Below are positions 2,321-63,299 of a DNA stretch of 64,000 nucleotides, piece after piece. The DNA is taken from positions 157,423-221,422 of the IMG/VR virus record IMGVR_UViG_3300024054_000362; one strand, written 5' to 3'. Numbering within the stretch: the first letter of the stretch is position 1; every line of letters begins with the position of its first letter. The notes under the pieces are model-generated. The model was not told the origin of the DNA and ran no database searches. It saw nothing but the letters and a program-made list of their open reading frames with translations. The position numbers and the translations under genes are program-made.

Positions 2321-3272
2321 GGCGCCTCCCACGCAACACCGCCGTGGTGGCGAACTTTTTTGCGAGACGGATAGCACCGTAACCAAGGCCGACGAAGCCG
2401 CCTACGAGAAGGAGGCCCGCAAGAAACTGTCGACCGCTCGTTTGTGCGGGCTGCCCAGGTACGTTTGTGCAGATCGGCAGACTGGCGGACCAAACTGGAC
2501 GCAGGCTTTGCGCAATGATGCCGTTGGCGTCGTAGACCGGATTGCCGAAGACCTTGCGAGCGCGTTCGATCAGTTGCTGACCTTCGAACGAATTTGCGTC
2601 CAAACCAAGCTTTCGAAACTGCGCCGTCTTCCAGTGATCGACACCGGGAATTGGCCCAACCCAGTAACTGCCGCCCGACTGCGTGCAACCTGTCCGTTTT
2701 TTGCCGAATGCCTCACACAAAACTCGTTCCATCGGAACCGGGAAGAACGCGCGAAACTCAAGGCCGTCCTGATCGTCGGCGCCGAGGTTGATGTTCTCGC
2801 TCTTGCCGCTCATGACGAGATCGGCGAGTAGAGTTGTCAGAACGCTTGGATCGCGACTTGTTGCTGCGAAGCGGTTGCCGATGTTGCCGTGACCGGGAAC
2901 GTTGATCTCGCCGTAGAGTTTGGACGGCTGTGTAAACAGGAGCAGGCCGTTGACGTCCGTCTTGCGGCGCGCGGCCTGGTTGACGGCGACCTCGCCGACG
3001 GCGACACGTTCTTCGACGGTGCCGTCACCGACCTCGCTGTGCATATAGCGCGCGAGCGTATACGTCAACAGTGTGAGCGGCTTGTCAGCAGGCCAGAAGC
3101 CAGATGCTTGGAGCTGTTTCTCCGCGCTCGCACGCATGGCTTCCGGGTCGCAGCGAATCTCTCCTAGCTCGTCGGTACGACAGCCCGAATTCAGGATTCG
3201 AAGATCGGCGGGACCACCGCGCATCGGCGCGAACTTCGGGTGCCACGTCGGGTAGCAATCAAGCACGGCCAT
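2304..3272 (-). CDS. SleB/Hydrolase_2-like cell-wall hydrolase with C-terminal TM anchor
   Basis: TLARYMHSEVGDGTVEERVAVGEVAVN resembles the SleB catalytic Glu helix; ends TM + VLRGRRRERRR. Confidence 0.65.
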   Translation of the reverse strand: MAVLDCYPTWHPKFAPMRGGPADLRILNSGCRTDELGEIRCDPEAMRASAEKQLQASGFWPADKPLTLLTYTLARYMHSEVGDGTVEERVAVGEVAVNQAARRKTDVNGLLLFTQPSKLYGEINVPGHGNIGNRFAATSRDPSVLTTLLADLVMSGKSENINLGADDQDGLEFRAFFPVPMERVLCEAFGKKRTGCTQSGGSYWVGPIPGVDHWKTAQFRKLGLDANSFEGQQLIERARKVFGNPVYDANGIIAQSLRPVWSASLPICTNVPGQPAQTSGRQFLAGLLLVGGFVGLGYGAIRLAKKFATTAVLRGRRRERRR

Positions 3273-3957
3273 AGCGCCTCCGTCGACCAAGCGTCATCGC
3301 GGCGCCTTTGGCGAAGCGCAGTGCGAGCCAGCTGAGTCCAACGAGTGTACCGAGCGCAGCGACGCCGACGAAGAAATCGCGTGTCGCGTGGCTTGTCTCT
3401 TGAACGGTGACCGCCGTCTGAGGACGATCGCGGAACAGCGGAATGCCGAGTGTCTTCGCGTTCGCGACCACCGATGCCGAATAACCGTCGACAGGGAGCC
3501 ACGGCTCGGCGGGGATTCCAACGCCGAAACCGAAATCAGAGAAGAAGCCCGTCGACGGCTTGCCAACGGCCTGTACGACAGCTGCGGTCAACGATTGCGG
3601 CACGAACAGATCGAAGTGGAGATGCGGTCCACCAGAGAGACCCGTCGAGCCTGAAAGGCCAATCTGTTGGCCCTTGGTGACCGCTTGACCTTGAGAGATC
3701 TGTGCTTGCGAAAGGTGCAGGTAGCGCGAGACGACGCCATCGGCGTGTGTGAGCGCGATGAAGATGCCAGCATCACTAGAGTCGGTTGGGACGACGCGCG
3801 TTGCAACGCCGTCAGCTGCAGCAAGGATCGGTGTCCCGACGGCCAACGGAATGTCAAGCGCGGGATGAAGTCCGGTCGCGCGCTGCGACCAACCGTCCAG
3901 CACTGTCAACGTGACGTTGCTGGGGGCGACGCGACCGAGATCGGGATCGAAAGCCAT
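3259..3957 (-). CDS. M23 metallopeptidase with C-terminal TM anchor
   Basis: HPALD (HxxxD), GTPILAAADG, YLHLS, GPHLHF (HxH); ends TM + TLGRRRRYGRA. Confidence 0.9.
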   Translation of the reverse strand: MAFDPDLGRVAPSNVTLTVLDGWSQRATGLHPALDIPLAVGTPILAAADGVATRVVPTDSSDAGIFIALTHADGVVSRYLHLSQAQISQGQAVTKGQQIGLSGSTGLSGGPHLHFDLFVPQSLTAAVVQAVGKPSTGFFSDFGFGVGIPAEPWLPVDGYSASVVANAKTLGIPLFRDRPQTAVTVQETSHATRDFFVGVAALGTLVGLSWLALRFAKGAAMTLGRRRRYGRA

Positions 3958-3958
3958 T

Positions 3959-4597
3959 TCATGCTCGACGACGGAAGTACTTGGGCGTGCGGTGGTTGCG
4001 ACTGAAGCGACGGCGGCCGAATCCTGCCCGATGCTTGGGTTTGCCGAAACCTTGAGCAATCGCAATCGTCGGCGTGATGATGGGGAACAAGGCTCCGAAG
4101 ATACCCCAGACGATCGCCCAGCCCACGCTGTCGTTGCGTTTGTAGCCGTGATAGACGCTCGCCGCGAACGACGCCGTTGCGAGGACGCTCCAGATTATAC
4201 GAACGGGCGTTGGTAGTCGCTTGAAGATCGTCGTGATACCGTTCGCCTTGGCAAGTGCCGCGTTGATCTGATTCGCCTGCGCGCCAAGCTTCACGGCACG
4301 CAGAGCGACATCAGAGCGATCACTGGCGTCGGGGATTGTCTGAAGAACCGCAACGGCTTGATCGAAGTTTTCAGTAGTCCCGAACTGTGTAATCAGGTCC
4401 AAAAGTCGTTTCGCGAGCGTATTCTTGTCGTCTTCGGTAAGCGCTCCTAAACCATTGAAGTGAACATCACCGTCGGGCGGCAGATCCCACGGGACTTTCT
4501 GAATGCTTCCGCCCCCGCCGGTGACGAAGACCGTCTCGTGCGGATGGACGGGGTAGAGGGTCTCGATACCAAGGGGCGTCGACACGGCGGCGAGCAT
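3959..4597 (-). CDS. membrane protein (MLA leader, GLG motif, two TMs, Arg tail)
   Basis: MLAAVSTPLG...NGLGA; two hydrophobic helices; AGFGRRRFSR tail. Confidence 0.7.
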   Translation of the reverse strand: MLAAVSTPLGIETLYPVHPHETVFVTGGGGSIQKVPWDLPPDGDVHFNGLGALTEDDKNTLAKRLLDLITQFGTTENFDQAVAVLQTIPDASDRSDVALRAVKLGAQANQINAALAKANGITTIFKRLPTPVRIIWSVLATASFAASVYHGYKRNDSVGWAIVWGIFGALFPIITPTIAIAQGFGKPKHRAGFGRRRFSRNHRTPKYFRRRA

Positions 4598-27657: not shown

Positions 27658-30600
27658 TCAGTTGACTTCCGCCCAAGTTTTTCCGGCCTTGGCGTCGACG
27701 GGAAAATTCATCTTGTTGCCGTTGTACTCGACCTCGCGCGTGAAGCACTTCACGACGAGGGCCTTGAGCAGATCCTGATCGTCTTCGTCGCACTCGAAGA
27801 CTACGGCATCGTGGATCTGAAGGATCGGCCACGCGCCCTCGGGCAGGAGCGGCATGATATCCGCGAGCCCCAGGTTGATAAGGTCAGCGCCCGACGCCTG
27901 AATCGGGAAGTTGACGACTTCGGTCAGGTCGAACTGCTTGATCGGAAAACATCGACGACGTCCGAGGATCATGCTTCGGATCTCGCCTTGCTGATCCGCC
28001 ATCCGTTGCATGTCCTGGTGCCACTTGGTGACGCCCGGCATGCGGGTCTTCATCACCTGCACCATCTTGCCGATCATGCCGATGGTGACCTGCGGGTAGT
28101 CGCGGACGACGGCCTTCCACAACGTCTCGATCGAGCCGGCGTAGAACGCGCCGTACTCCGGGCGCTTGATCAGGTCGCGGCGGACCTTGCGTTCGTCGAC
28201 AGGAACCGTGTCGAAGTCCGGCCAGACGATGCGCGCGAACTCGCTATGGATGTCCTTGTCCTTGTGGAAGATGTCGAGGAGGAACGGGTCACCTGACATG
28301 AGCGCGATCAGGCGTGCTTCGAGTTGCTTCGCATCGAAAGCGACGAACGCACGCCCGTACGGTGCGACCACCTGGCTACGGAGGTTGGGGCGTCCCTTCT
28401 TTTTGTCGGCCTTGGGCCAGTTCTGTGCTTGTGGTCCTTCGGAGCGCCATCGTCCAGTGATGGCGTGGACGCTCCATCGTGGGTGAACACGCAGCCACGG
28501 ATCGGCGAAGCCGTAACGGATCTTGCCGGGGATCGGTCGGCCTTCCTTGTCGAGGACCGGGCGATCGAGCATGCGTTCACAGAACGTCGACAGGAGCTTT
28601 GCGTTCTCGCGGTAGTTGAGGAGCGCTTGGATTTCCGGGTACTGCGAGAACGCTTCGAGGACGTCTTTCTTTGTCGAGATTCGACCACTGGCCGTCTGAA
28701 GACTGAGCGGCACACCGCAGGCCTTGAGGAAGGCCACGATGTGATCGCCCGAGTCGATCATGAAGTTGAACTTGCTAGCCTCGATCTCGCCGAGGCGTTT
28801 CGAAATACGTTCGTCAAGATCGATCGGATCGTGCTTTCGCGTACGCCGCGCCTGTTCGAAGGCGAGCCGTTCCTTGAAGCGCGCCAGGATCGTCGGATCC
28901 TGAATTTTGTCGTCCAGCTCTTTTTTGGCCGCATCGATGTTGGCGCGGAAGCCTTTGCGGAGTTGCCCGTTGATTTCTGGATCGATCGGGACGCCCTTCA
29001 TGTGCATCACGCTGGCGGCGTGCGCCATCGCGAGATCCACCTTGTAGGTCTTCTCGGCGTTCGACTCCTTGATGATGAGCGCGATCGGACCTTCGATACG
29101 TGCCGTCGCAAGCGTGTCGCGTGCGTTGTAGGGCAGCAGCTCGTCGAGCGTTCCTTGACCATGGCGGTATTCGGCCTTCCACGGCGGAGCGGCGTAGAAC
29201 TGCGTCAGGACACGCTGAAGGTTGTGTGCGAGGCCTGGGAACGCACTGTGATGCATGAGCATCGTGCAGTGGATTTCGCCGTTGATCTGAAAACCGTGAC
29301 GTTCCAAGACAGGTACGTCGTAGATCCGGTTGTGGAAGATCTTGACGACGGACTCGTCGGCGAACAGTTTGTCGAGCGGTTCGAGAACCTCCGGGATGCA
29401 CAGCTCCCACGCGATGCTGATCGCGCGCTCGAACGTGGCGAGCCCGAGCGCCGACATGTTGGCGTTGTAAGGTGAGAGCGCGGTGTGTTGCTTCGTGTTT
29501 TCGACGAAGGTCTCGGTGTCACACGCGAACCGACCTGAACGGTATGCGTCGACGACGAAGTCGGCGACGAGCTTCTTCGCCCGCTGCCAATCTTCTAGTT
29601 CGACCTGAATGTCGTCGGTGAACTTGATGTCGGCGCCCTGCGAGATCAGGTTCACCTTGGCCGTGTCGTAGAGCAGGTTCCAGAAGGCGAGGTCGACCGT
29701 GTGTGACCCACCACCGCCACTCGCACCGCCGCCACGAAGGATCGCAGCGGGGTGAATGCTCGGGATCACCGCACGCGTCCGTCCGCTGTTGTCGCAGTCG
29801 ACCTCGTGGTACGAGCCCGCCATCTGCGTGATCGAGAACTTCTCGTTGCCAGTGAGTTGTTGGGCGGCGTGAGCCCCGAGGGCGAGGACGGGCACGCCGG
29901 GGAACTGTGCGATCTCTTGTTTGAGTCGGTCGCCACAAGCTTGACGTGCTTGCTTCTTGATGGCGTCGGAGGCGCCGTGCGGCGGTTGGCAGTTGTGAAC
30001 GACGGCTCCGGGCGTGAGGAAGTTGTGCGTGCCTTCCACTTCGAGGCAGTACACGGTCGCGCCTTCGCCTTTTCGTCGGGGGCTCGTACAGACGCTCTCG
30101 GCCTGATCGTAAAAGGCCGCTGCTGGAATGGGCTCGTATGTTTGCGGGTCGTACTTGCCGCGATCTTCAGGTCGAAGTTTGTACGCCATCACAGGTGGAA
30201 CGTAAGTCGCGATCGCAGCACTGAATCGCGCAGTCCCTTCGACCGTGAATCGGATACGGCCGCGCCGAACGCGGTTTTCGAAACCGCGTGCACGTAGTAC
30301 TGCAGAGGCGTGAAGAAGATCTGGTTCGGGAAAGGCGACGCCACAAATCTCGGCGAGCGGACGGTGCCCGTTGCGGATCTGCATGTACCCATCGTCTAGG
30401 TACCAGACGGCAAACAACAGCTCGTCCGCCGAAGCGAGAACAGTCGATGGGATTCGTTTCTTGCCTTCGGGGTAGAAGAGGTCGCGTGTTGCATGTCCCC
30501 ATGCACCGGCAGCTGTACGGAACCCGTACTTAGCTTGCTCATTTTGTCGGGGTGGCTGTTGGAACAGTGACACGCCGAATTTTTTCAACACGCGCGCCTT

Positions 30601-31347
30601 CAGCATCGCGTACTGTTTTTGATCTTCGGCGTGGGTAACTACGAGTGAGCCCTTTGCGAGGGTTCCGTCACCGAGCAACGTTCCATAGGCAACCTGCAGT
30701 GCACGACCCGCAGGTGCCACGTCGCCGGTGGCGATCCACCCACCGTTGATATCGGCGGCGGGTCGCCAACCTTCCGGTGTCAGGACGGGATGATCTTCGG
30801 TAAGTACGGCATGCGTTCGTCCTCGGGCTCCTGCACGTTGCGCCCATCGGAACGATACGTCACGCATCTCGCGCGTTCCTCGTGGATTTCGATACCAGTT
30901 CGTAACGCGCGCTGCGATCACACTCCCTGTTGCGTCGATGGACTGTACGAGTCCGTCATAACGGTTGGCAACGAGGTGATCGATCCGTTTCAGGGATCCG
31001 TCTGCGAGTCGAACTTGGGTGGTCCCTTCGACGCACAGCATGCTGTTCGACACCCACAACGACTCACGTGCGATGCCGAGCCTGGAGAGCGTTTCGTTGA
31101 CGAGACGACCGGAGCTGCCGACGAACGGGCGCTGCTGGATGACTTCGTTCTGGCCAGGTCCTTCGCCGACGACGATGAAGTTTGGCCGTTCCCAGCCCTC
31201 ACCGAAGACAGGTTGGTTCGGTTTGCCGAACTTGCCGAATGGACAGTTTGCGCAGTCGGCGCCGTGCGCGTTGCCGCGGATTGTCTTCGGCGCGTCGTCG
31301 TCGACGAAGCGATCCTCGGACGGCATATCGGCAACGGTGAAGCTCAT
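27658..31347 (-). CDS. family A DNA polymerase with N-terminal family-4 uracil-DNA glycosylase domain and an intein
   Basis: UDG: CANC, VGEGPG, PFVGSSG, HPAAILR; exonuclease: CDTET, HNRIYD, YNARD; polymerase: DAKQLEAR, KRPEYG, QIHD; start at ATGA overlap. Confidence 0.92.
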   Translation of the reverse strand: MSFTVADMPSEDRFVDDDAPKTIRGNAHGADCANCPFGKFGKPNQPVFGEGWERPNFIVVGEGPGQNEVIQQRPFVGSSGRLVNETLSRLGIARESLWVSNSMLCVEGTTQVRLADGSLKRIDHLVANRYDGLVQSIDATGSVIAARVTNWYRNPRGTREMRDVSFRWAQRAGARGRTHAVLTEDHPVLTPEGWRPAADINGGWIATGDVAPAGRALQVAYGTLLGDGTLAKGSLVVTHAEDQKQYAMLKARVLKKFGVSLFQQPPRQNEQAKYGFRTAAGAWGHATRDLFYPEGKKRIPSTVLASADELLFAVWYLDDGYMQIRNGHRPLAEICGVAFPEPDLLHASAVLRARGFENRVRRGRIRFTVEGTARFSAAIATYVPPVMAYKLRPEDRGKYDPQTYEPIPAAAFYDQAESVCTSPRRKGEGATVYCLEVEGTHNFLTPGAVVHNCQPPHGASDAIKKQARQACGDRLKQEIAQFPGVPVLALGAHAAQQLTGNEKFSITQMAGSYHEVDCDNSGRTRAVIPSIHPAAILRGGGASGGGGSHTVDLAFWNLLYDTAKVNLISQGADIKFTDDIQVELEDWQRAKKLVADFVVDAYRSGRFACDTETFVENTKQHTALSPYNANMSALGLATFERAISIAWELCIPEVLEPLDKLFADESVVKIFHNRIYDVPVLERHGFQINGEIHCTMLMHHSAFPGLAHNLQRVLTQFYAAPPWKAEYRHGQGTLDELLPYNARDTLATARIEGPIALIIKESNAEKTYKVDLAMAHAASVMHMKGVPIDPEINGQLRKGFRANIDAAKKELDDKIQDPTILARFKERLAFEQARRTRKHDPIDLDERISKRLGEIEASKFNFMIDSGDHIVAFLKACGVPLSLQTASGRISTKKDVLEAFSQYPEIQALLNYRENAKLLSTFCERMLDRPVLDKEGRPIPGKIRYGFADPWLRVHPRWSVHAITGRWRSEGPQAQNWPKADKKKGRPNLRSQVVAPYGRAFVAFDAKQLEARLIALMSGDPFLLDIFHKDKDIHSEFARIVWPDFDTVPVDERKVRRDLIKRPEYGAFYAGSIETLWKAVVRDYPQVTIGMIGKMVQVMKTRMPGVTKWHQDMQRMADQQGEIRSMILGRRRCFPIKQFDLTEVVNFPIQASGADLINLGLADIMPLLPEGAWPILQIHDAVVFECDEDDQDLLKALVVKCFTREVEYNGNKMNFPVDAKAGKTWAEVN
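29992..31035 (-). mobile_element. LAGLIDADG intein (348 aa) in the UDG domain of the polymerase
   Basis: NSML|CVEGTT...HNFL..GAVVHN|CQPP; LLGDG and WYLDDG motifs. Confidence 0.9.
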
Positions 31348-32459
31348 GCGCGCAGTGCCTCCATGAACCACGTGAGCCACGAAGGAAGATCGACGATGGG
31401 CGCCGGAATCCAAAACGCCGGTTCACCAGAAACTTGCGTTGAAGGGGCGACTGCGATGAGGCCTCCTTCACAGAGAATTTCTAGGCCGGCCGCGAATCGT
31501 TGGCTGCGCGGGAGCCAGAGGCCGTGCGGAACGTTGTAGAAGTGCGCGCGCACGTCACCTGTCTGATGTGTCAACGTGATTGGTAGAGGCCCGTCGACAG
31601 TACTGACGGCGCGTGTGACTACGACCAAGAGTCGCGATGCTCCTCCAGTTCGAATGCCGATGCGCGTGCTTGGTGCGTGCCTCCACATATTGGCGACGCG
31701 TTCAGGGCGACATCCAGGAAATGTGTGTGAGACGAGATGCAGTCCAAGTTGTCTACAGGTTGTTCCTTCTGAACACGTACAACCGGCCTTGCCTTGTGCT
31801 TCAGGGGTCCTGAGCGGATTCGTGAATTGTAGATCTCGCAACGGGTCAACCCAGAAGTGGTGCTGCACATACCGTTGCGCAGCTTCGGTCAAGGACACCG
31901 TGTGATTCGGAAGCCAGGACCAGTCTCGGGTCTCGTGAGGCGTTGGTGGTGGTGGTGGCACTGCTGCGAGCAATTGTTCGGCGTCAGCCTCGCGCAGAAA
32001 TTTTTCCGGGATCAGATAACACGGTCGTGCAATGTCTTCGCGCCACCAGTTCGCGTAGCGCGCCAGACGTGGCAATGTCCAACCTACGATCTCGATCGAC
32101 GGACAACGGTGGGTGTTGACCAGGACGTGGGGGACATCTTCGGGATCTTGATCATGGAGTGGTAGACACCCGTTGGGATAGTTCGTCGAGCGAACACGGA
32201 TCCCCCCTACAAGACCAGCTTCTGTCCGCGCCGCTTCCCAGTCGCGCAGATTGAGTGCACCTGCCCATCCACAGTTCAGGAACTGTGCGAATGCGTACTC
32301 AGCGAGTGCACCTTGAATGTCGATCGTCTCACCGTCGGCTGTCGGCGTGACGCGCCCATCGTTGCGACCGCCTTGACGCTGTACGCGATAGCGTGTGCGA
32401 CCAACCTTGACGGCGTGCGCGACCTCGACATCAGACAGTTGAATCTGGATTCGCGTCAC
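31344..32459 (-). CDS. fusion of a nuclease-like domain and a degenerate primase-polymerase domain
   Basis: N-half GALAEYAF..VRST; C-half aligns by eye to 51726-52931 but lacks the DxD motif. Confidence 0.55.
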   Translation of the reverse strand: MTRIQIQLSDVEVAHAVKVGRTRYRVQRQGGRNDGRVTPTADGETIDIQGALAEYAFAQFLNCGWAGALNLRDWEAARTEAGLVGGIRVRSTNYPNGCLPLHDQDPEDVPHVLVNTHRCPSIEIVGWTLPRLARYANWWREDIARPCYLIPEKFLREADAEQLLAAVPPPPPTPHETRDWSWLPNHTVSLTEAAQRYVQHHFWVDPLRDLQFTNPLRTPEAQGKAGCTCSEGTTCRQLGLHLVSHTFPGCRPERVANMWRHAPSTRIGIRTGGASRLLVVVTRAVSTVDGPLPITLTHQTGDVRAHFYNVPHGLWLPRSQRFAAGLEILCEGGLIAVAPSTQVSGEPAFWIPAPIVDLPSWLTWFMEALRA

Positions 32460-56200: not shown

Positions 56201-56692
56201 GTGATTCTCGGCGTTACGGGACATCGACCCGATAAGATCGGCGGCTACGACGACGACGCCAACCCGCTACGCAGCTGGGTTCGTGGACAGATTCGTCGAC
56301 ACCTACAAACGTTTCGGCCGCTGTACGGCATCAGCGGGATGGCGCTCGGAACGGATCAAGATTTCGCCGCTGCCTGCGTCGAGCTGGGCATTCCGTTCAT
56401 CGCCGCCGTGCCGTTCAAAGGTCAGGAGCTGGCGTGGCGATCGCATCCGACGTCGCGCAAGAGGTATCGCGAGCTGATTGCGAAGGCTTACGAGGTCGTG
56501 ATCGTGAGTGAAGGTGGTTACGAGAATTTCAAAATGCAGGTGAGGAACGAGTGGGTCGTGGATCATTGCAACGCGATGTTGTGCGTGTTCGACGGTTCAC
56601 CCGGCGGAACGGCAAACACCGTCAACTACGCTGACCGCGTTCGCCGTGACAAGATCCGTATCAACCCTCGGGACTTTCAGGCGGCCGTGTGA
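56201..56692 (+). CDS. YspA/DUF1273 SLOG-family protein
   Basis: VTGHRP, SGMALGTD, RNEWVVD, DGSPGGT. Confidence 0.85.
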   Translation: MILGVTGHRPDKIGGYDDDANPLRSWVRGQIRRHLQTFRPLYGISGMALGTDQDFAAACVELGIPFIAAVPFKGQELAWRSHPTSRKRYRELIAKAYEVVIVSEGGYENFKMQVRNEWVVDHCNAMLCVFDGSPGGTANTVNYADRVRRDKIRINPRDFQAAV

Positions 56693-57446: not shown

Positions 57447-58314
57447 AGATGAACTGCACCTGCGATCAGCGCGGCGACTTCTGCCCCGAGCATCCCACCT
57501 GCGCGTGCGGTTGCGAGCGGCACGCGCACCGCGGCAACGCCGAGTGCATCGCCGGCTCGATGAACTGCCACGGTTGTAACGCCTACCGCCCGGCGCGGCT
57601 CAAACGCTTCCACGAGCTGTACGACCACGACCTTGAAGACATCACGTTGGATGCCCTCAAGCTCGCCTACAGAGACCTGCGCGCGCACCACATCGAAGAA
57701 ACCACGGCGTTGTGGCATAGGATCACCAATCCGAAGTGAAGACCTACGAGACCAAGCCGTCTGAGCCGCCGACAACATGTCCCGTCCCGCGATGTGGCTA
57801 CAAGCGCGTCTGGAAGTATTTCAAGTACGACCGCGTACGCGGTGGTCGTAAGCCGCCGCGTGACGGTTGGCGGGCGCACTGTGCAGCCTGTGCGGTGCTC
57901 ACCGAGCTACGCCATCATAAACGCCGCGCCGAAGTACTCCAAGAACGCTGGTCGGCGATGGTAGAACCGCCGAAGCCTGTGCCGCGTCGATAGTTCTCGT
58001 TCTGACGAAAAGCCTCGACGACGGTGAAGACCGACGACGGTGAGGACTTGCGGAATTAGTCTTGCTTTGGTGCTTGCTTTAGTGAGTGCCTTTGTGCTGT
58101 GCTATAGCTCTCGACTTCTAGGGGAACCATGGGCACCAAAATCACGGCACTTGCCAAGGCGAAAAAGATCGGCATGTACGAAGACGCCAAGAGGGCGATC
58201 TTCGTCAACGTCACCGAAATCGACATCGAGCGCGCGACATGCTTCGCGCCCGACCAGTGCGCAATGGCCAAGGCTGCTTGCCGCGCAATTCCGAATGCGT
58301 TGAGGGCCTTCTTC

Positions 58315-59505
58315 CATGCTTATCCGGTTAACACCCCAAACATGATTTAGACACATGAGTACCGTACTGACACATCAAGTCACGATCTGGATGGCAGGCG
58401 ACAAGTTGTGCTGAACCTCGCGAACTGGCGTAAGTACCAGCACCTGTTTGTCCCTCCGTCCGATCGCCCGTGCATCGCTGGAGTCAGCGGTGGTTCGACG
58501 AGTGGTGTGATGGCCGCGCTGCTCTCGGCTGCCGTGCTCATGTCGTTCCAGAACACGGGCAAAGAGCACGCGCTGACTTACGAATTCCTGGAGGCGCTCG
58601 CAGATGCTATCGGTCGCGAGATTGTCTGGTTGGAGTACCGCCCGCCCGCCTCGCGCGGGGCCCCGCCTGCGGCGGCACGTTTTGCAGTCGTAACACCGCG
58701 AACCGCTGATCGTAGCGGCGGACCGTTCGAGATGATGATGATGGACGCGATCAACGCATATCGCGCAGCCATCGGTAAGGGGCCGATCGCGCCGTGGTGG
58801 CGCTCGCGCATCTGCACGACGTACATGAAGACGCGACTCGCGCGCCGCTACGTGGAGTCGCTTGGGTGGAACGGCCACGATGAACTAGTGGGGCTTCGTG
58901 CCGACGAGCCCGATCGTGTGGCCAAACTCCGCGTGGGCGTCCCCAAGCGAATCGGTCGCCATGCGCCGCTTAGCGTCGCTGGTTTCACGGCCAACGATGT
59001 AGCTGCGTTCTGGGGTGAGCAGTCGTTCAGGCTCAACCTGCCGCCTCACCTCGGCAACTGCACTGGATGCTTTCTAAAGGACCAGGCCGACCAAAGCCGC
59101 GCGCTCGACCAGAATGGCGACGTCGATTACTGGGCGGGTATGCAGGAGCGGCATCCGGGATTCGGCGGCAAGAATCACCCCGGCTATCGTCGGCTCGCAG
59201 CCGAGGCGCCATCGCGTTACGCGATTGAGGCGGCACTGTTGGCCGGGCGAACGCCCGATAACGAGAACGGTATGGAGTCTCGTCGGTTCAAGCTTGTTGT
59301 CATCCAGGAGCGCAAGCGGCTAGCCGGACAGGTGGCGCCGTTCTCGTGTGCGTGCGAGGGCTCCGACGCACTAGCGCAGATGGACGACGACGAAGAGAAC
59401 GCATACATCGCATCACTACCAAGTGAGGACGCGGCATGAAGAGTGCCAATTCACAATCTAACAAGGACGGTCAGACCTGTTATGGGTGCCAACCGGATAA
59501 GCATG
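58315..59505. mobile_element. non-autonomous TIR transposon/mobile insertion cassette with passenger gene
   Basis: TIR CATGCTTATCCGGTT (58315-58329) and its complement (59491-59505); TSD CCTTCTTC at 58307-58314 and 59506-59513; no transposase. Confidence 0.9.
58408..59439 (+). CDS. PAPS-reductase/PP-loop family protein
   Basis: SGGSTS, NTGKEH..TY, RICT..MK, GLRADE..R, GNCTGCFLK. Confidence 0.8.
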   Translation: MLNLANWRKYQHLFVPPSDRPCIAGVSGGSTSGVMAALLSAAVLMSFQNTGKEHALTYEFLEALADAIGREIVWLEYRPPASRGAPPAAARFAVVTPRTADRSGGPFEMMMMDAINAYRAAIGKGPIAPWWRSRICTTYMKTRLARRYVESLGWNGHDELVGLRADEPDRVAKLRVGVPKRIGRHAPLSVAGFTANDVAAFWGEQSFRLNLPPHLGNCTGCFLKDQADQSRALDQNGDVDYWAGMQERHPGFGGKNHPGYRRLAAEAPSRYAIEAALLAGRTPDNENGMESRRFKLVVIQERKRLAGQVAPFSCACEGSDALAQMDDDEENAYIASLPSEDAA

Positions 59506-59815
59506 CCTTCTTCTACGAGAATGCTGTGTACATCGCATACTACGACACGAAGACAAAGAAGAAGAGGACCTTGCGCTTCATTCCTTCACCGGAAGCGCGG
59601 AAGAACATTCATACCTTCGACACGACCGGGAAGTTCTCTCCAGGACGCTACCGGCTGGACGCACCCAAGGGTTCGGACACGCTGGCCAGCATTCGTGAGC
59701 GGAGTCGACGTCGTCCTGGTCGACATCCTCCGAGCAACAAGCCGGTGATCAAGCGCGCTGTCAAGGCTACCGTCAAAGGGCGTCTGCAGTACGCCTACGC
59801 CTACTAGCCGAGACC

Positions 59816-60277
59816 GTGAAGACCGACGACGAGATCAGTCACGCGATCGCGCGAGCACACAGCGACGAAGCCGTGTTCGCTGACTACCTGCGCGGCTTTG
59901 GTCTCGTCGTCGATACACTCTCCCGCGGTTTTCGAAAGTCGCTCGACGACATCGCGCAGTACGCCCACGACGTCGACCTGCAAGTCGCCGGCTACGCTTG
60001 CCAGTACAAGCATCGCGGCAACGCGCGGCTCGCGTACATCGTCAGGAACTACTGGGGGCCGTTCCTCGACGAGAAGCAGAAGGCCGATCGCACGCCGGTC
60101 GACTTCTACATCCTCGACTTCACCGACGCGACAGTGATCGCACCGTATGCACCGGATCTGTGGAAAGTCCAGACCAACGACGATCGATCGGACCGAGCAC
60201 GCGCGAAACAGTTCTACATCGTGAACATCCGCGACTGCGTCCAGCTGCAAGCCTGGATCGACTGGCTCAGAAGCTGA
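59816..60277 (+). CDS. hypothetical protein, possibly nuclease fold
   Basis: DVDLQV...QYK. Confidence 0.5.
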   Translation: MKTDDEISHAIARAHSDEAVFADYLRGFGLVVDTLSRGFRKSLDDIAQYAHDVDLQVAGYACQYKHRGNARLAYIVRNYWGPFLDEKQKADRTPVDFYILDFTDATVIAPYAPDLWKVQTNDDRSDRARAKQFYIVNIRDCVQLQAWIDWLRS

Positions 60278-60430
60278 CGTCGAGTGATCTCGCCGCGGTT
60301 CGTTCGCATCATAGGCTTGACTTGTCAGGTACATCTGCGAAACGTTCAGTTCCAGTAGAGAACGGCTTGACTCGTCGAAGTCGTGCGTGAGAGGTTCAGT
60401 TCGAGTAGAGCGCGACAATTTAGGGAGCAC

Positions 60431-62536
60431 ATGAAGAGCACGAGGCTAGGGCCTCGGTCACTCACTGCCCGTAGGGTTCGGGACGTTGAGCGACCACTGG
60501 TCGAGGACATTCTTGCGACCGCAGATCGTGGAGCCGCTCTCGCCGTAGCGTTCGGTGCGCAGGAAACTCGCGCTGTCTGTCTTTGGTCGGATATCGGCAA
60601 GGCATCCGAGTCCTGGCAGATCCAGCAACGCGGGTCGAAGTACGGCCTACGTATTAACCATGTTGGATTAGGCGTTTGGCACACCTTACGCGTTCCCGGC
60701 ATCCCGTCCATGCAACGATTGGCAATCGCTGTCGCGATCGCCGGTCACCATGGTGGTCTCCCAGACGCAAGTTACCTACCTGCACTGGCAGATGAGAGCG
60801 CACCGCTTCGAGAGGCGCTGATCGATCTTCCCGACGAGATCACTGCCCTTCCCGTAATGCGACAACGTCGGTTCGCAAACGCGACGCATTTGTTCATGTT
60901 CACGCAGATGATCGCGTCGGCACACATCGACGCCGACTGGCAAAACGCGGCGGAATGGGAGCGAGAAGTCTGTGGTGCGCCCATCACACGACCTTCGTAT
61001 CCGAGCATCGAACAGCTCTACCGACAGTTGGAGAGCGTGTGCAGTGACACACGGCTCGATCGGAGCGATCTCCGTACTGCGTTCCGTTTGCACTATCTAA
61101 GTGCCGCTGAACGTGTTCCGGGGTTCTATTCGTTCTCAGCCCCTCTCGGTGCGTTCAACGTCGAAGCCTTGGCGCTGTACGGGCTGGCACACGCGCGACG
61201 CAACGCACGAGAAAGGGTCATCCTTGTCTGTTCGACGCAGATGATGTTCGAAGAGTGCACAGACAAGCTTCGTGCCTCTCTCGGAGACGCATTCGCAGAG
61301 CCCGCCGCGTTCGACGTCCAAAGTTGTGGGTTCAGTCCTCGTGTCGAGACCTGGGACGCTCCTGTCGTCGTTACCGCGCTTCGAGATTTCTTAGGGCTCC
61401 TCTTTGACAATCGTCCAGCGTCTCTGCGACGTTTCCATCACCTCGCACGCGCAGTGGTCGTTGTCGTCGACGCACAACAGATCCCGTTGCCCGTGCGCAC
61501 GTTGACCCGCGAAGCGTTACAAGTACTCGTTGATCATTTCCACGCTTCGGTGTCGCTCGTGTCGGCGGTCCCCTACGGAGTCGCGGAGGACGATCGACCA
61601 GAGTTGTTGGGGCCAAAGGACGCCTTCAACACGGTCTACGGAGAGATTCAGACCACATGGCCCGATCATCACGAACCGTTACCCTCCGCCGTACAGATCG
61701 CACACGAGATCGCCGAGCACGCTGAGTGTTTGACGGTTCTCCAAGATGCATCCAGATTGCGTGAGGTAGCACAAGCGATGAGGGCGTACGTCCCCGACGT
61801 CCAGGTCACTGCCGTGTCGTCTCGGATGTGTGCTGAACATCGTCGTGCGGTGATACGTAACCTTCGTGGAGGGTGTATCATCGCCGACGAAATCGGGAGT
61901 GCTCTCGCGAGGACGTTCAATACGGTCCTGTGTGAGATGACCGAACTGCCGACCATGGCCGCTGCTGCCTGTCGTGCGTTTGGTGACGGTCAGCGGCGTG
62001 CAAACTTCAAAGTTCTTCTCTCGACGAGACGTACGGCTGGAGCTGTCGTCACGCACCTCATGTGGCGAGGTCGTTCAACACTGGCGTTTCAGGATCCCGC
62101 AACCTGGCGCGAGTACTTTCTGGACTTGCGCTCCGGGGTTCTACCAAACGATCGGCAGTGGGCCGACGCTCGTCAGGCGGACGTCGAGTGTCTTCGGTTC
62201 CGAACACTGGCCGCGGAAATGTTGCGTGTCGGCAAACGCTGCGCGGCACCTGTGAGCCTTGGGTTGGGAGAAGCCAGCCTAGTCCCGGTCGTCGTTCCTA
62301 TGCCACTGCCGAGGGGTGGCTCCAGACCGGCGACCAAAGCCTTGATCGACAGGCTTCGTGCAGACGGTTCAAGTCAAGAAATTCTACGTCGACTCATGAG
62401 CTACGTCGTGTGGATCTCCGTCGACGAGCGCACACAACTTCTTCGCGACGGTCATGCTGTCTGGGTCAGCGAGGCCGTGGTCTATGTGATCAACGAGCTT
62501 CTGTACGATGAATTTGGGCTGAAGCCACTAGCCTAG
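60431..62536 (+). CDS. cas3: type I-C Cas3 homologue, catalytically degenerate
   Basis: IAGHHGGLPD, IDADW, ETWDAPVVVT, SRMCAEHR and YD..FG match I-C Cas3; HD reads SD, Walker A reads APLGAFNV, Walker B reads VDAQ. Confidence 0.85.
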   Translation: MKSTRLGPRSLTARRVRDVERPLVEDILATADRGAALAVAFGAQETRAVCLWSDIGKASESWQIQQRGSKYGLRINHVGLGVWHTLRVPGIPSMQRLAIAVAIAGHHGGLPDASYLPALADESAPLREALIDLPDEITALPVMRQRRFANATHLFMFTQMIASAHIDADWQNAAEWEREVCGAPITRPSYPSIEQLYRQLESVCSDTRLDRSDLRTAFRLHYLSAAERVPGFYSFSAPLGAFNVEALALYGLAHARRNARERVILVCSTQMMFEECTDKLRASLGDAFAEPAAFDVQSCGFSPRVETWDAPVVVTALRDFLGLLFDNRPASLRRFHHLARAVVVVVDAQQIPLPVRTLTREALQVLVDHFHASVSLVSAVPYGVAEDDRPELLGPKDAFNTVYGEIQTTWPDHHEPLPSAVQIAHEIAEHAECLTVLQDASRLREVAQAMRAYVPDVQVTAVSSRMCAEHRRAVIRNLRGGCIIADEIGSALARTFNTVLCEMTELPTMAAAACRAFGDGQRRANFKVLLSTRRTAGAVVTHLMWRGRSTLAFQDPATWREYFLDLRSGVLPNDRQWADARQADVECLRFRTLAAEMLRVGKRCAAPVSLGLGEASLVPVVVPMPLPRGGSRPATKALIDRLRADGSSQEILRRLMSYVVWISVDERTQLLRDGHAVWVSEAVVYVINELLYDEFGLKPLA

Positions 62537-62581
62537 GTGGCTGGTCTTCCGAGCAGGTTCGCAGGGAAAGTAGGCTAGGTA

Positions 62582-62620
62582 CGCCTTAAAAATCAAGGAC
62601 TTACGAGTTTACTCTCGACA
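62582..62620 (+). promoter_or_regulatory. conserved ~40-bp upstream element, copy 2
   Basis: CGCCTTAAAAATCAAGGACTTACGAGTTTACTCTCGACA upstream of cas5. Confidence 0.55.
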
Positions 62621-62663
62621 GAACGGACGCCTCGCGCGTCGTAGACAACAACAGGGAGAGCAC

Positions 62664-63299
62664 ATGAAACGGAGCAGTGTACTTGCACTACGCGCAATGG
62701 GGCGGCGCGCGTGTTGGACGAACCATCTTTGTCGTGTCGAACGACAGACATACGACATTCCTACGCCGTCTGGCGCTGTAGGGGTGTTCGAAGCTGTCAA
62801 TTGGCATCCCGGAATGCATTGGGAGCTGCACAAAATCTGGGTACTCAAGCCCATTCAGCACTTTTCACTGCGCACGAACGAGGTGAAGTGTTTCGCAGGC
62901 CGCCAGCCAATCAACATCGACAGCAATCGGACGCAGCGCAATACCGTCGGGCTCTACGACGTCGACTACATCTTCGAGGCCAGCTTCGTACTGGACGCGC
63001 GTGCGTCTCACGACGTCGCGACCAACGAAGACATCTTTCGTCGGCGCGTCAAGAACGGTGCCTGCTATCACACGCCGTATCTGGGGATGCACCCCTTTAT
63101 CTGTGACGTGATGGCGCCGCCTGCCCAGTATACGCCGATTCGCCTGAGTCGGAGTTTTGGGCGAATGTTGTACGGGTTCGACTACACGAATAAGAAGCCG
63201 ACGCCGCTCTACTTCGAAGCCTCGATGGAGAACGGTGTCGTGCAGATCCCTTCGCGTGAATACGTTCTTCAGAACCAAGGGATCAACCATGTTCCGTGA
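62664..63299 (+). CDS. cas5: type I-C Cas5 (Cas5d/Cas5c)
   Basis: ACWT...VERQTYDIPTPS, W.P, VLKPI, RTNEV, RTQR..L.DVDY, PYLG, GRMLY. Confidence 0.92.
   Translation: MKRSSVLALRAMGRRACWTNHLCRVERQTYDIPTPSGAVGVFEAVNWHPGMHWELHKIWVLKPIQHFSLRTNEVKCFAGRQPINIDSNRTQRNTVGLYDVDYIFEASFVLDARASHDVATNEDIFRRRVKNGACYHTPYLGMHPFICDVMAPPAQYTPIRLSRSFGRMLYGFDYTNKKPTPLYFEASMENGVVQIPSREYVLQNQGINHVP

What the first reader, a model, noticed from the sequence alone, without database searches (positions are those of the whole stretch)
58307..59513. Transposase-less 1191-bp cargo transposon carrying a PAPS-reductase-family gene
Seen: perfect 15-bp TIRs (CATGCTTATCCGGTT, with further partial CACCC..AACA matches), an 8-bp TSD (CCTTCTTC) and a single passenger ORF. 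Removing the element restores a 159-aa ORF. The 5'-CAT ends recall IS4-family IS231 and its mobile insertion cassettes, although IS231 TSDs are usually longer. PAPS-reductase-like phage proteins are linked to DNA/nucleotide modification, so this may be a mobile modification or anti-restriction cassette. The perfect ends imply a recent insertion.
Basis: partly seen in the sequence, partly recalled or inferred. Interest (0 to 1): 0.8.

Follow-up and report, generated by a model that had tools for sequence, protein, structure and literature searches.

The report
Transposase-less IS1595 gene cassette in phage
A 1,191-bp mobile cassette that has lost its own transposase sits inside a gene of a giant lake-water phage and carries a NinC/PAPS-reductase-like enzyme; it belongs to a large IS1595-family lineage whose identifiable cargo in phage and bacterial DNA is mostly DNA-modification genes.

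Summary
Window 58315-59505 is a 1,191-bp element with 28-nt inverted ends (first 15 perfect) and an 8-bp duplication, CCTTCTTC. Removing it restores a 159-aa ORF. A 70%-identical uninterrupted homologue (P0122/L247) has one CCTTCTTC at exactly that position.

The ends are not IS4/IS231. The same ends (consensus CATGCTTATCCGGTTnnCACCCA) bound 92 elements, or 81 distinct insertions of 101-2,563 bp, and 84 of the 92 have perfect 8-bp duplications. Four 1,167-1,170-bp copies carry only a 346-aa IS1595-family transposase. Thirteen carry transposase plus a passenger gene, 39 carry cargo only, and 25 are MITE-like.

The window copy is therefore a non-autonomous IS1595 cassette (a MIC). A sister copy, L003, is 88% identical, sits at a different site and has its own duplication. 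L003 keeps a second gene (phrog_4848) that survives in the window only as a 19-codon stub. A relative, L248, has the same cargo next to the transposase.

The cargo is a PP-loop ATPase with invariant cysteines, not a transposase. Identifiable sister cargo is mostly DNA methyltransferases.

The insertion is present in every lake sample checked from 2018 to 2025, so "recent" is not shown. This is a new member of known kinds (MIC, transporter IS). The size of the lineage in phage contigs is the interesting part.

The parts
58307..58314 (.). Left copy of the 8-bp target-site duplication, CCTTCTTC
   Evidence: The empty-site homologue L247 has a single copy. It fits the lineage's target pattern S-W-W-N-S-W-W-S at 7 of the 7 specified positions except position 2.
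58315..58342 (+). Left terminal inverted repeat. The conserved core is the first 23 nt, CATGCTTATCCGGTTaaCACCCc.
   Evidence: pair I1. Lineage consensus from 104 ends. Position 58342 is A in the window and G in L002, L044 and all four lake runs laid.
58355..58414 (+). 19-codon stub (MSTVLTHQVTIWMAGDKLC). It is the start of a 110-aa phrog_4848 gene, most of which was lost in a ~271-bp deletion. Its stop overlaps the GTG start of the cargo gene.
   Evidence: The intact gene is at L003 2376-2708. The alignment of L003 with the window breaks at window 58403/58395. PHROG hit 5.9e-31. Translation.
58408..59439 (+). Cargo gene: a 343-aa NinC/PAPS-reductase-like PP-loop ATPase with invariant cysteines C136, C218, C221, C314 and C316
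   Evidence: phrog_424 7e-31. Pfam PF01507 at 18.4 bits, below the 22.5 cutoff. tblastn hits to phage NinC / PAPS-reductase genes at about 30% identity. Invariant columns. AlphaFold2 pLDDT 94.9. Best PDB folds are LarE, GMP synthase and CysH. Weak SspD hit, 3e-8.
59436..59807 (+). Outward-reading ORF of 123 aa. Its ATG overlaps the cargo stop (ATGA). It reads 23 codons through the right end and continues in frame into the 3' half of the interrupted gene.
   Evidence: L003 has the same arrangement (3727-4005). Whether it is expressed was not tested.
59478..59505 (-). Right terminal inverted repeat
   Evidence: The ~45 nt just inside it are also shared with two cassettes that carry other cargo, L054 and L216.
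59506..59513 (.). Right copy of the 8-bp target-site duplication, CCTTCTTC
58129..58350 (+). 5' half of the interrupted phage gene (62 codons), running 11 codons into the left end before a stop
   Evidence: Its N-terminus aligns with P0122.
59514..59807 (+). 3' half of the interrupted phage gene (97 codons); function unknown
   Evidence: No Pfam or PHROG family.

Best explanation
The element is a non-autonomous derivative of an IS1595-family insertion sequence. It is a mobile insertion cassette (MIC): two IS ends around passenger DNA, with no transposase.

Shown: it carries the lineage's conserved 23-nt ends, an 8-bp target duplication at a site that fits the lineage's target pattern, and no transposase gene.

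Inferred: an IS1595-type DDE transposase made elsewhere (by the host chromosome, or by a co-resident element that keeps its transposase plus cargo) bound the two ends and inserted the cassette into a staggered 8-bp cut in a small phage gene.

The passenger was a two-gene phage module: a phrog_4848 protein plus a NinC-like PP-loop ATPase. Its nearest non-mobile relatives sit among phage replication genes such as DNA polymerase, primase and helicase. A relative still has the NinC-like gene next to the transposase inside the same kind of left end. The window copy later lost most of the first gene by a ~271-bp deletion.

The NinC-like protein most likely adenylates a substrate and uses an iron-sulfur cluster held by the conserved cysteines. 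My best guess is that the substrate is a nucleotide or nucleic acid and that the benefit to the phage is DNA modification or counter-defence. That guess is inference only.

The interrupted gene may still be made as two pieces, because an ORF that starts at the cargo stop reads out through the right end into the 3' half.
For: Ends, duplication and empty site.

Lineage:
- The end pattern occurs in at least 120 metagenome contigs (the scan stopped at its limit), 46 genome contigs and 69 IMG/VR viral contigs.
- 92 elements have paired ends and a duplication matching at 7 or 8 of 8 positions. 84 of them are perfect, and they represent 81 distinct insertions.

Cognate transposase: 1,167-1,170-bp copies (L120, L139, L141, L164) encode a 346-aa protein with DDE_Tnp_IS1595 and Zn_ribbon_IS1595 domains and an NF033547 match.

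Mobility of this cassette: L003 2335-3796 is 88% identical from end to end, has unrelated flanks, and has its own duplication GGTGTTAC.

Origin:
- L248 has the left end, then the NinC-like gene (83% aa identity), then the IS1595 transposase.
- L249/L250 have the NinC-like gene plus a truncated Zn-ribbon stub.
- L251, L252 and L261-L263 have it as an ordinary phage gene without paired ends around it.

No transposase in the window: tblastn.

The cargo is not a transposase: it has a PP-loop fold and motif.

Cargo of sister elements: four kinds of DNA methyltransferase, a second unrelated PAPS-reductase-like protein, and DHH/DHHA1 and HAD hydrolases. Dam-PAPS_reduct fusion proteins exist in the Atlas.
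Against: - No transposition was observed. No empty-site allele was found in the lake contigs, but those are contigs, which drop rare variants.
- Only 64 kb of the 221-kb contig was searched for a transposase. The viral-contig scan finds close relatives only.
- The transposition chemistry of IS1595 elements is assumed from the DDE domain, not shown.
- Cargo function rests on fold, motifs and the company it keeps. The Pfam score is below threshold, the SspD hit is weak and mostly N-terminal, and the PDB TM-scores are low (0.3-0.44).
- Expression of the two gene halves is untested.
Confidence: 0.85

Rival explanations
1. The cassette arrived by transposition but is now a fixed, immobile part of this phage genome. 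In effect it is a domesticated gene insertion, and the phage never meets a matching transposase.
For: The identical insertion is present in three other contigs from other samples (L002, L044) and in lake runs from 2018 to 2025, with a single SNP and no empty-site contig. The window has no transposase.
Against: Both ends match the lineage consensus, and the duplication is intact. Another element with the same ends is present in one of the same lake runs (X12 record 9). Contigs cannot show rare excision or empty alleles.
Confidence: 0.35
2. The element is autonomous, and the NinC-like PP-loop protein is itself a new kind of transposase.
For: One ORF fills most of the element, as in an ordinary IS. 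Several relatives lie on contigs of about 1.1-1.2 kb.
Against: The protein has a confident PP-loop ATPase fold with no RNase-H-like domain. The same ends enclose a bona fide IS1595 transposase in other copies, and L248 has both genes side by side. Most homologues are ordinary phage genes without these ends.
Confidence: 0.02
3. It is an IS4-family (IS231-like) mobile insertion cassette.
For: The ends begin with CAT, and the overall design resembles MIC231.
Against: The duplication is 8 bp in 84 of 92 copies. Every transposase found between these ends is IS1595 family. No IS4-type transposase was found between them.
Confidence: 0.02
4. The cargo is a true sulfate-assimilation enzyme (PAPS/APS reductase), that is, an auxiliary metabolic gene, not a nucleic-acid or nucleotide-modifying enzyme.
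For: Database names such as PAPS reductase and phrog_424 ('moron, auxiliary metabolic gene'). CysH is among the fold matches.
Against: It scores below Pfam's threshold for PF01507 and has no NCBIfam match. The profile found no solved structure by sequence. It is 343 aa, with an extra C-terminal helical region and a cysteine pattern unlike that of CysH. Resident homologues lie among phage DNA polymerase, primase and helicase genes. Identifiable sister cargo is mostly DNA methyltransferases.
Confidence: 0.1
5. It is a chance inverted repeat or an assembly artefact.
For: None.
Against: The same structure is found in independent assemblies and samples. A homologous element lies at another site. 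An empty-site homologue exists. There are 81 distinct insertions with duplications.
Confidence: 0.005

Closest known systems
Mobile insertion cassettes (MICs), e.g. MIC231 derived from IS231 in the Bacillus cereus group (De Palmenaer et al. 2004, cited in PMC3129680)
   Same: IS-type inverted ends flank passenger gene(s). There is no transposase, there is a target duplication, and movement is presumed to depend on a cognate transposase supplied in trans.
   Different: The IS family differs (IS1595, not IS4). The duplication is 8 bp. The cassette sits in a jumbo-phage genome, and it belongs to a lineage in which cargo-bearing copies far outnumber plain IS copies in this sample (39 cargo-only and 13 transposase-plus-cargo against 4 plain).
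IS1595-family 'transporter IS' with passenger genes (Siguier, Gagnevin & Chandler 2009, cited in PMC3129680 and PMC8101967)
   Same: Same transposase family, 8-bp duplication and passenger genes between the ends. L248, L087, L184, L226 and others in this lineage are exactly this type.
   Different: The window element has lost the transposase. I did not assign a subgroup. From memory, the ends resemble the ISSod11-group consensus nnnGcnTATC, but that was not tested.
Lambda NinC and the 'PAPS reductase' genes of Chi-like and other phages
   Same: The cargo shares the PP-loop family (tblastn about 30% identity, E down to 4e-19; phrog_424).
   Different: The similarity is distant. Those genes are ordinary resident genes, and none has a known biochemical function as far as I know.
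DndC / SspD, the PAPS-reductase-like ATP pyrophosphatases of DNA phosphorothioation systems
   Same: PP-loop motif and conserved cysteines. There is a weak PADLOC SspD hit, 3e-8.
   Different: The best stretch covers only residues 23-76. No Dnd or Ssp partner genes lie in or next to the cassette.
MPME1/MPME2 mobile elements of mycobacteriophages (from memory)
   Same: Small mobile elements with inverted repeats, found inside phage genomes at variable sites.
   Different: They are about 440 bp with short repeats and their own small ORF. They are unrelated in sequence and not linked to IS1595. No comparison was run here.

Membership tests
IS1595 family (as a non-autonomous derivative) | 8-bp target-site duplication | tested here: met
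   CCTTCTTC on both sides. 84 of 92 lineage copies have perfect 8-bp duplications. The family norm is given in PMC8101967.
IS1595 family (as a non-autonomous derivative) | Ends identical to those of elements encoding a DDE_Tnp_IS1595 plus Zn-ribbon transposase | tested here: met
   L139, L141, L120 and L164 have the same 15-nt tip (0-1 mismatch) and the CACCCA box. Their 346-aa ORF hits PF12762 at 5e-33, PF12760 at 2e-10 and NF033547 at 4e-52.
IS1595 family (as a non-autonomous derivative) | Own transposase gene (needed to call it an autonomous IS) | tested here: not met
   tblastn with the cognate transposase finds nothing in the element or anywhere in the 64-kb window.
Mobile insertion cassette (MIC) | IS ends around passenger gene(s) with no transposase, present at more than one genomic site | tested here: met
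   The window and L003 copies are 88% identical end to end, with unrelated flanks and different duplications.
Mobile insertion cassette (MIC) | Mobilisation in trans by the cognate transposase | not testable with these tools
   This needs a transposition assay.
IS4 family / IS231-MIC231 | Cognate IS4-type transposase and a longer (10-12 bp) duplication | tested here: not met
The duplication is 8 bp, and every transposase found between these ends is IS1595 family.
PAPS reductase / NinC family (PF01507, PP-loop ATPases) | Significant match to the family model | tested here: inconclusive
   Pfam 18.4 bits against a cutoff of 22.5. PHROG 424 is clear at 7e-31, and the Atlas neighbours are PAPS_reduct clusters.
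PAPS reductase / NinC family (PF01507, PP-loop ATPases) | PP-loop motif (SGGxxS) and the alpha/beta ATP-pyrophosphatase fold | tested here: met
   G28, G29 and S32 are invariant or nearly invariant across 78 homologues. The model has pLDDT 94.9. The top PDB folds are LarE, GMP synthase and CysH, all with probability about 1.0 but TM-scores of only 0.3-0.44.
DndC / SspD DNA phosphorothioation enzymes | Full-length match and presence of partner genes (DndA/B/D/E or SspA/B/C) | tested here: not met
   The SspD hit's best stretch covers only residues 23-76. The neighbours are unrelated small ORFs and Cas genes.

The most novel reading that the evidence does not exclude
This IS1595 lineage is less an ordinary bacterial IS than a gene shuttle that moves DNA-modification and possibly counter-defence genes between phage genomes and their hosts across many bacterial groups. 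The genes in question are methyltransferases, PP-loop enzymes and DHH phosphoesterases. Cargo-bearing copies outnumber plain copies roughly 13 to 1. The near-invariant ends stay open in two of the three outward reading frames and finish in ATG, which may let the 3' part of a hit gene be re-expressed, so that insertions inside phage genes are tolerated. On this reading the NinC-like cargo would be a new phage DNA- or nucleotide-modifying counter-defence enzyme.
Probability: 0.3. Interest if true: 0.75.

Novelty: new member of a known kind. Interest (0 to 1): 0.55.

Why it matters
Phage genomes are usually thought to be poor in transposable elements. Here one conserved pair of IS1595 ends marks at least 69 predicted viral contigs and more than 160 other contigs, and most copies carry cargo rather than a transposase. 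If these cassettes move between phages, they offer a simple route by which accessory genes spread. They would also give a practical handle: any ORF found between these ends is a candidate phage accessory or counter-defence gene. Many of those ORFs have no known family. For this window, the result explains a split gene in a jumbo phage that also carries Cas3c and Cas5c genes of the type I-C kind, and it links the poorly understood NinC-like proteins to DNA-modification cargo.

Tried and rejected
- Megablast of the region against GenBank phages, and blastn of the element against plasmids, found nothing.
- A profile of the cargo family against PDB sequences gave no hit. NCBIfam gave no hit for the cargo.
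- The promoter and terminator scan of 57900-59900 found nothing above the shuffled background.
- The element's G+C (0.613) does not differ from the phage's (0.611), so composition gives no sign of foreign origin.
- Contigs of four lake runs laid on the region showed no empty-site joint and only the 58342 A>G difference. This does not show absence, because contigs drop rare variants.
- A scan of viral contigs for close relatives of the transposase returned 8 loci, none on the window's contig. That is a weak negative.
- L243 has an element of exactly 1,191 bp, but its cargo is unrelated.
- L074 interrupts a 158-aa ORF after codon 62, like the window, but the two proteins are unrelated.
- I tested whether insertions inside ORFs favour the frame in which the terminal ATG is in frame with the downstream fragment. 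The count was 15 of 30 (11 of 20 for longer ORFs), a weak excess. ORF calls in this high-GC DNA are noisy, and L003 was assigned a different frame than by inspection, so I draw no conclusion.
- I looked for the third catalytic residue in the transposase alignment to assign an IS1595 subgroup and did not settle it.
- Literature searches found no description of IS1595 cassettes in phages. The library lacks most subscription journals, so this is not proof of novelty.
Full report
**1. The observation**

- The inverted-repeat arms are 58315-58342 and 59478-59505. They are 28 nt long and 86% complementary, and the first 15 nt (CATGCTTATCCGGTT) match perfectly.
- CCTTCTTC lies directly outside both ends, at 58307-58314 and 59506-59513. 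The element is 1,191 bp.
- The 15-mer occurs only at these two places in the window, and no shuffle reached the observed number of matches.
- Removing the element and one repeat copy joins 58129-58314 to 59514-59807 as an in-frame 159-aa ORF.

**2. The empty site**

The 3' piece of that ORF finds one relative besides itself: P0122, 139 aa, from a JGI metagenome.
- Its sequence covers both halves of the rejoined ORF, with 95 of 135 aligned residues identical.
- Its DNA (L247) reads ...AAAGCCTTCTTCTACGAA..., with a single CCTTCTTC where the window has the element.

This is what a target-site duplication predicts.

**3. Context**

The window is part of a 221-kb IMG/VR contig (L001). It encodes:
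- a DNA polymerase with a LAGLIDADG insert
- a ribonucleotide reductase
- helicases
- a terminase-like protein
- immediately downstream of the element, a Cas3c and a Cas5c.

It is therefore a jumbo phage that carries type I-C-like cas genes. The runs that hold it are lake-water metagenomes from 2018 and 2025. The same insertion, with a single base difference (58342 A/G), is in L002 and L044 and in all four runs laid. No contig shows the empty site.

**4. The family**

The end pattern CATGCTTATCCGGTTNNCACCC is found in:
- 46 contigs of MAGs and genomes, mostly soil Alphaproteobacteria but labelled with many phyla
- 69 IMG/VR viral contigs.

Pairing ends (at most 3 mismatches in 15) and requiring at least 7 of 8 matching flanking bases gives 92 elements of 101-2,563 bp. 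84 of them have perfect 8-bp duplications, and they represent 81 distinct insertions.

The ends have the consensus CATGCTTATCCGGTTnnCACCCA. Positions 1-15 and 18-23 are almost invariant in 104 ends. The duplicated targets follow S-W-W-N-S-W-W-S.

Four copies of 1,167-1,170 bp contain only a 346-aa ORF. That ORF has the IS1595 DDE domain and the IS1595 zinc ribbon, and it matches NCBI's IS1595 transposase model. The rest divide as follows:

| Class | Distinct insertions |
|---|---|
| Transposase only (1,167-1,170 bp) | 4 |
| Transposase plus a passenger gene | 13 |
| 450 bp or more, no transposase | 39 |
| Shorter, MITE-like | 25 |

The 8-bp duplication and the zinc-ribbon-plus-DDE transposase are the family's published hallmarks (PMC8101967). 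MITEs, MICs and IS with passenger genes are established categories, the last described for this very family (PMC3129680, citing Siguier et al. 2009 and De Palmenaer et al. 2004). The IS4/IS231 suggestion is therefore wrong.

**5. This cassette moves, or moved**

L003, from an unrelated Logan assembly, contains an element at 2335-3796.
- It is 88% identical to the window's element from the first base to the last.
- Its flanks are unrelated and it has its own duplication, GGTGTTAC.
- It is 271 bp longer, because it keeps a 110-aa gene (phrog_4848, function unknown) ahead of the NinC-like gene.

The window keeps only the first 19 codons of that gene (58355-58414), and the stub's stop overlaps the GTG start of the cargo gene. 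The window copy is thus a deletion derivative of a two-gene cassette.

In both copies an ATG that overlaps the cargo stop opens an ORF. That ORF runs out through the right end, in frame, into the 3' part of the interrupted gene. This could allow the downstream half to be translated, but it is untested.

**6. Where the cargo came from**

The NinC-like protein has about 140 relatives in the protein collection. Contexts fetched for the closer ones show a series (aa identity to the window protein):
- L252 (71%): the phrog_4848-like gene and the NinC-like gene sit as ordinary neighbours in a phage primase region, with no ends.
- L251, L261, L262 and L263 (73-79%): likewise resident genes, in L262 and L263 next to DNA polymerase genes.
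- L249/L250 (79%): the gene is followed by an 89-aa stub of the IS1595 zinc ribbon, with no ends.
- L248 (83%): a perfect left end, then the NinC-like gene, then an IS1595 transposase (64% identical to L141's) that runs off the contig.
- Window and L003 (94% to each other): the ends remain but the transposase is gone.
- P0003 (85%): the gene spacing matches the window's, but no DNA could be fetched.

The simplest reading is that a phage gene was captured by a transposase-bearing element, which then lost its transposase.

About 45 nt inside the right end are also shared with cassettes L054 (an N6/N4 methyltransferase) and L216. Their alignment scores are 16-17, against a 95th percentile of 6. 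This suggests that cargo is exchanged on a common backbone.

**7. What the cargo is**

- The protein hits phage 'PAPS reductase' PHROG 424 at 7e-31. Its Pfam PF01507 score is just under threshold.
- Seventy-eight homologues share an invariant PP-loop (G29, S32) and five invariant cysteines (C136, C218, C221, C314, C316).
- The AlphaFold2 model is confident, with pLDDT 94.9.
- Its nearest solved folds are [4Fe-4S] LarE, GMP synthase and CysH. These are all PP-loop ATP pyrophosphatases, and the TM-scores are modest.
- PADLOC gives a weak hit to SspD, the phosphorothioation enzyme.
- The Atlas contains Dam-PAPS_reduct fusion proteins.

The cargo is not a transposase.

Among sister elements, the cargo that can be named is:
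- D12, N6/N4, C5 and other DNA methyltransferases (L020, L031, L054, L087, L123, L184, L226)
- a second, unrelated PAPS-reductase-like protein (L195)
- DHH/DHHA1 phosphoesterases (L129, L214)
- a HAD hydrolase (L137).

Many sister cargo ORFs have no family. By association, a role in DNA or nucleotide modification is the best guess. I rate it well below the structural conclusion.

**8. Age and activity**

The perfect 15-nt tips are a property of the whole lineage, so they do not date the insertion. The insertion is fixed in every sample seen over seven years. The window has no transposase, and a scan for close relatives in viral contigs did not return its contig. Another element with the same ends is present in one of the same lake runs. 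Whether the cassette can still move is open.

**9. Verdict**

This is a real transposon insertion, correctly spotted and correctly read as a transposase-less cargo cassette, but assigned to the wrong IS family and not shown to be recent. It is a new member of known kinds (MIC, IS1595 transporter IS).

The part worth following is the lineage. It has nearly invariant ends, cargo copies that far outnumber plain IS copies, frequent presence in predicted phage contigs, and identifiable cargo that is mostly DNA-modification genes.

Noticed in passing
window 60383-63299 (L002 extends 2.3 kb beyond the window end): The jumbo phage carries CRISPR-Cas genes right after the cassette. A 717-aa Cas3 (PADLOC Cas3c 2.5e-60; Pfam Cas3_HD) lies at 60383-62536, and a Cas5c/Cas5d (2.8e-42) at 62664-63299. 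This points to a type I-C-like system. I did not look for the rest of the operon or for any array.
   Followed up: partly
window 27658-31413 (- strand): The 1,251-aa DNA polymerase has a LAGLIDADG homing-endonuclease-like segment at residues 239-415 (phrog_11023, 1.8e-15). This suggests an intein or an inserted endonuclease, which would be a second kind of mobile element in the same phage.
   Followed up: no
window 58342: The window has A here, at the innermost base of the left inverted repeat. L002, L044 and all four lake runs laid have G.
   Followed up: yes
L034 4053-4358, 8626-8888, 9527-9812 (contig Ga0214473_10000121, 111 kb): Three separate MITE-like copies (263-306 bp) of the same lineage lie within 6 kb of one contig, each with its own perfect 8-bp duplication. 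L115 and L219 each hold two copies, and L242 shows a nested or tandem arrangement.
   Followed up: no
L249 4036-4305 and L250 2538-2807: An 89-aa ORF keeps only the IS1595 zinc-ribbon part of the transposase. It sits directly after a NinC-like gene, with no inverted ends nearby. It is either a decayed element or a retained DNA-binding fragment.
   Followed up: partly
L004-L013 (protein P0033, 58% identical to the cargo): The identical 339-aa NinC-like protein lies in two different gene contexts across 13 contigs of one study. Many of those contigs break 64 nt upstream of the gene. No ends of this lineage were found there, so the reason for the two contexts is unexplained.
   Followed up: partly
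window 56201-56692: A YpsA/SLOG-family protein (Pfam 2e-8) lies 1.4 kb upstream of the interrupted gene. The contig holding P0003, which has a cargo relative, also has a cpYpsA gene plus PTPS (QueD-like) and PP-binding genes. This hints at a nucleotide-modification neighbourhood.
   Followed up: no
81 insertions in loci L014-L246: The outward-facing last three bases of every end are ATG, and two of the three outward frames through the end are open. Among 30 insertions inside ORFs of at least 150 codons, 15 have that ATG in frame with the downstream fragment. This is a weak excess on noisy ORF calls.
   Followed up: partly
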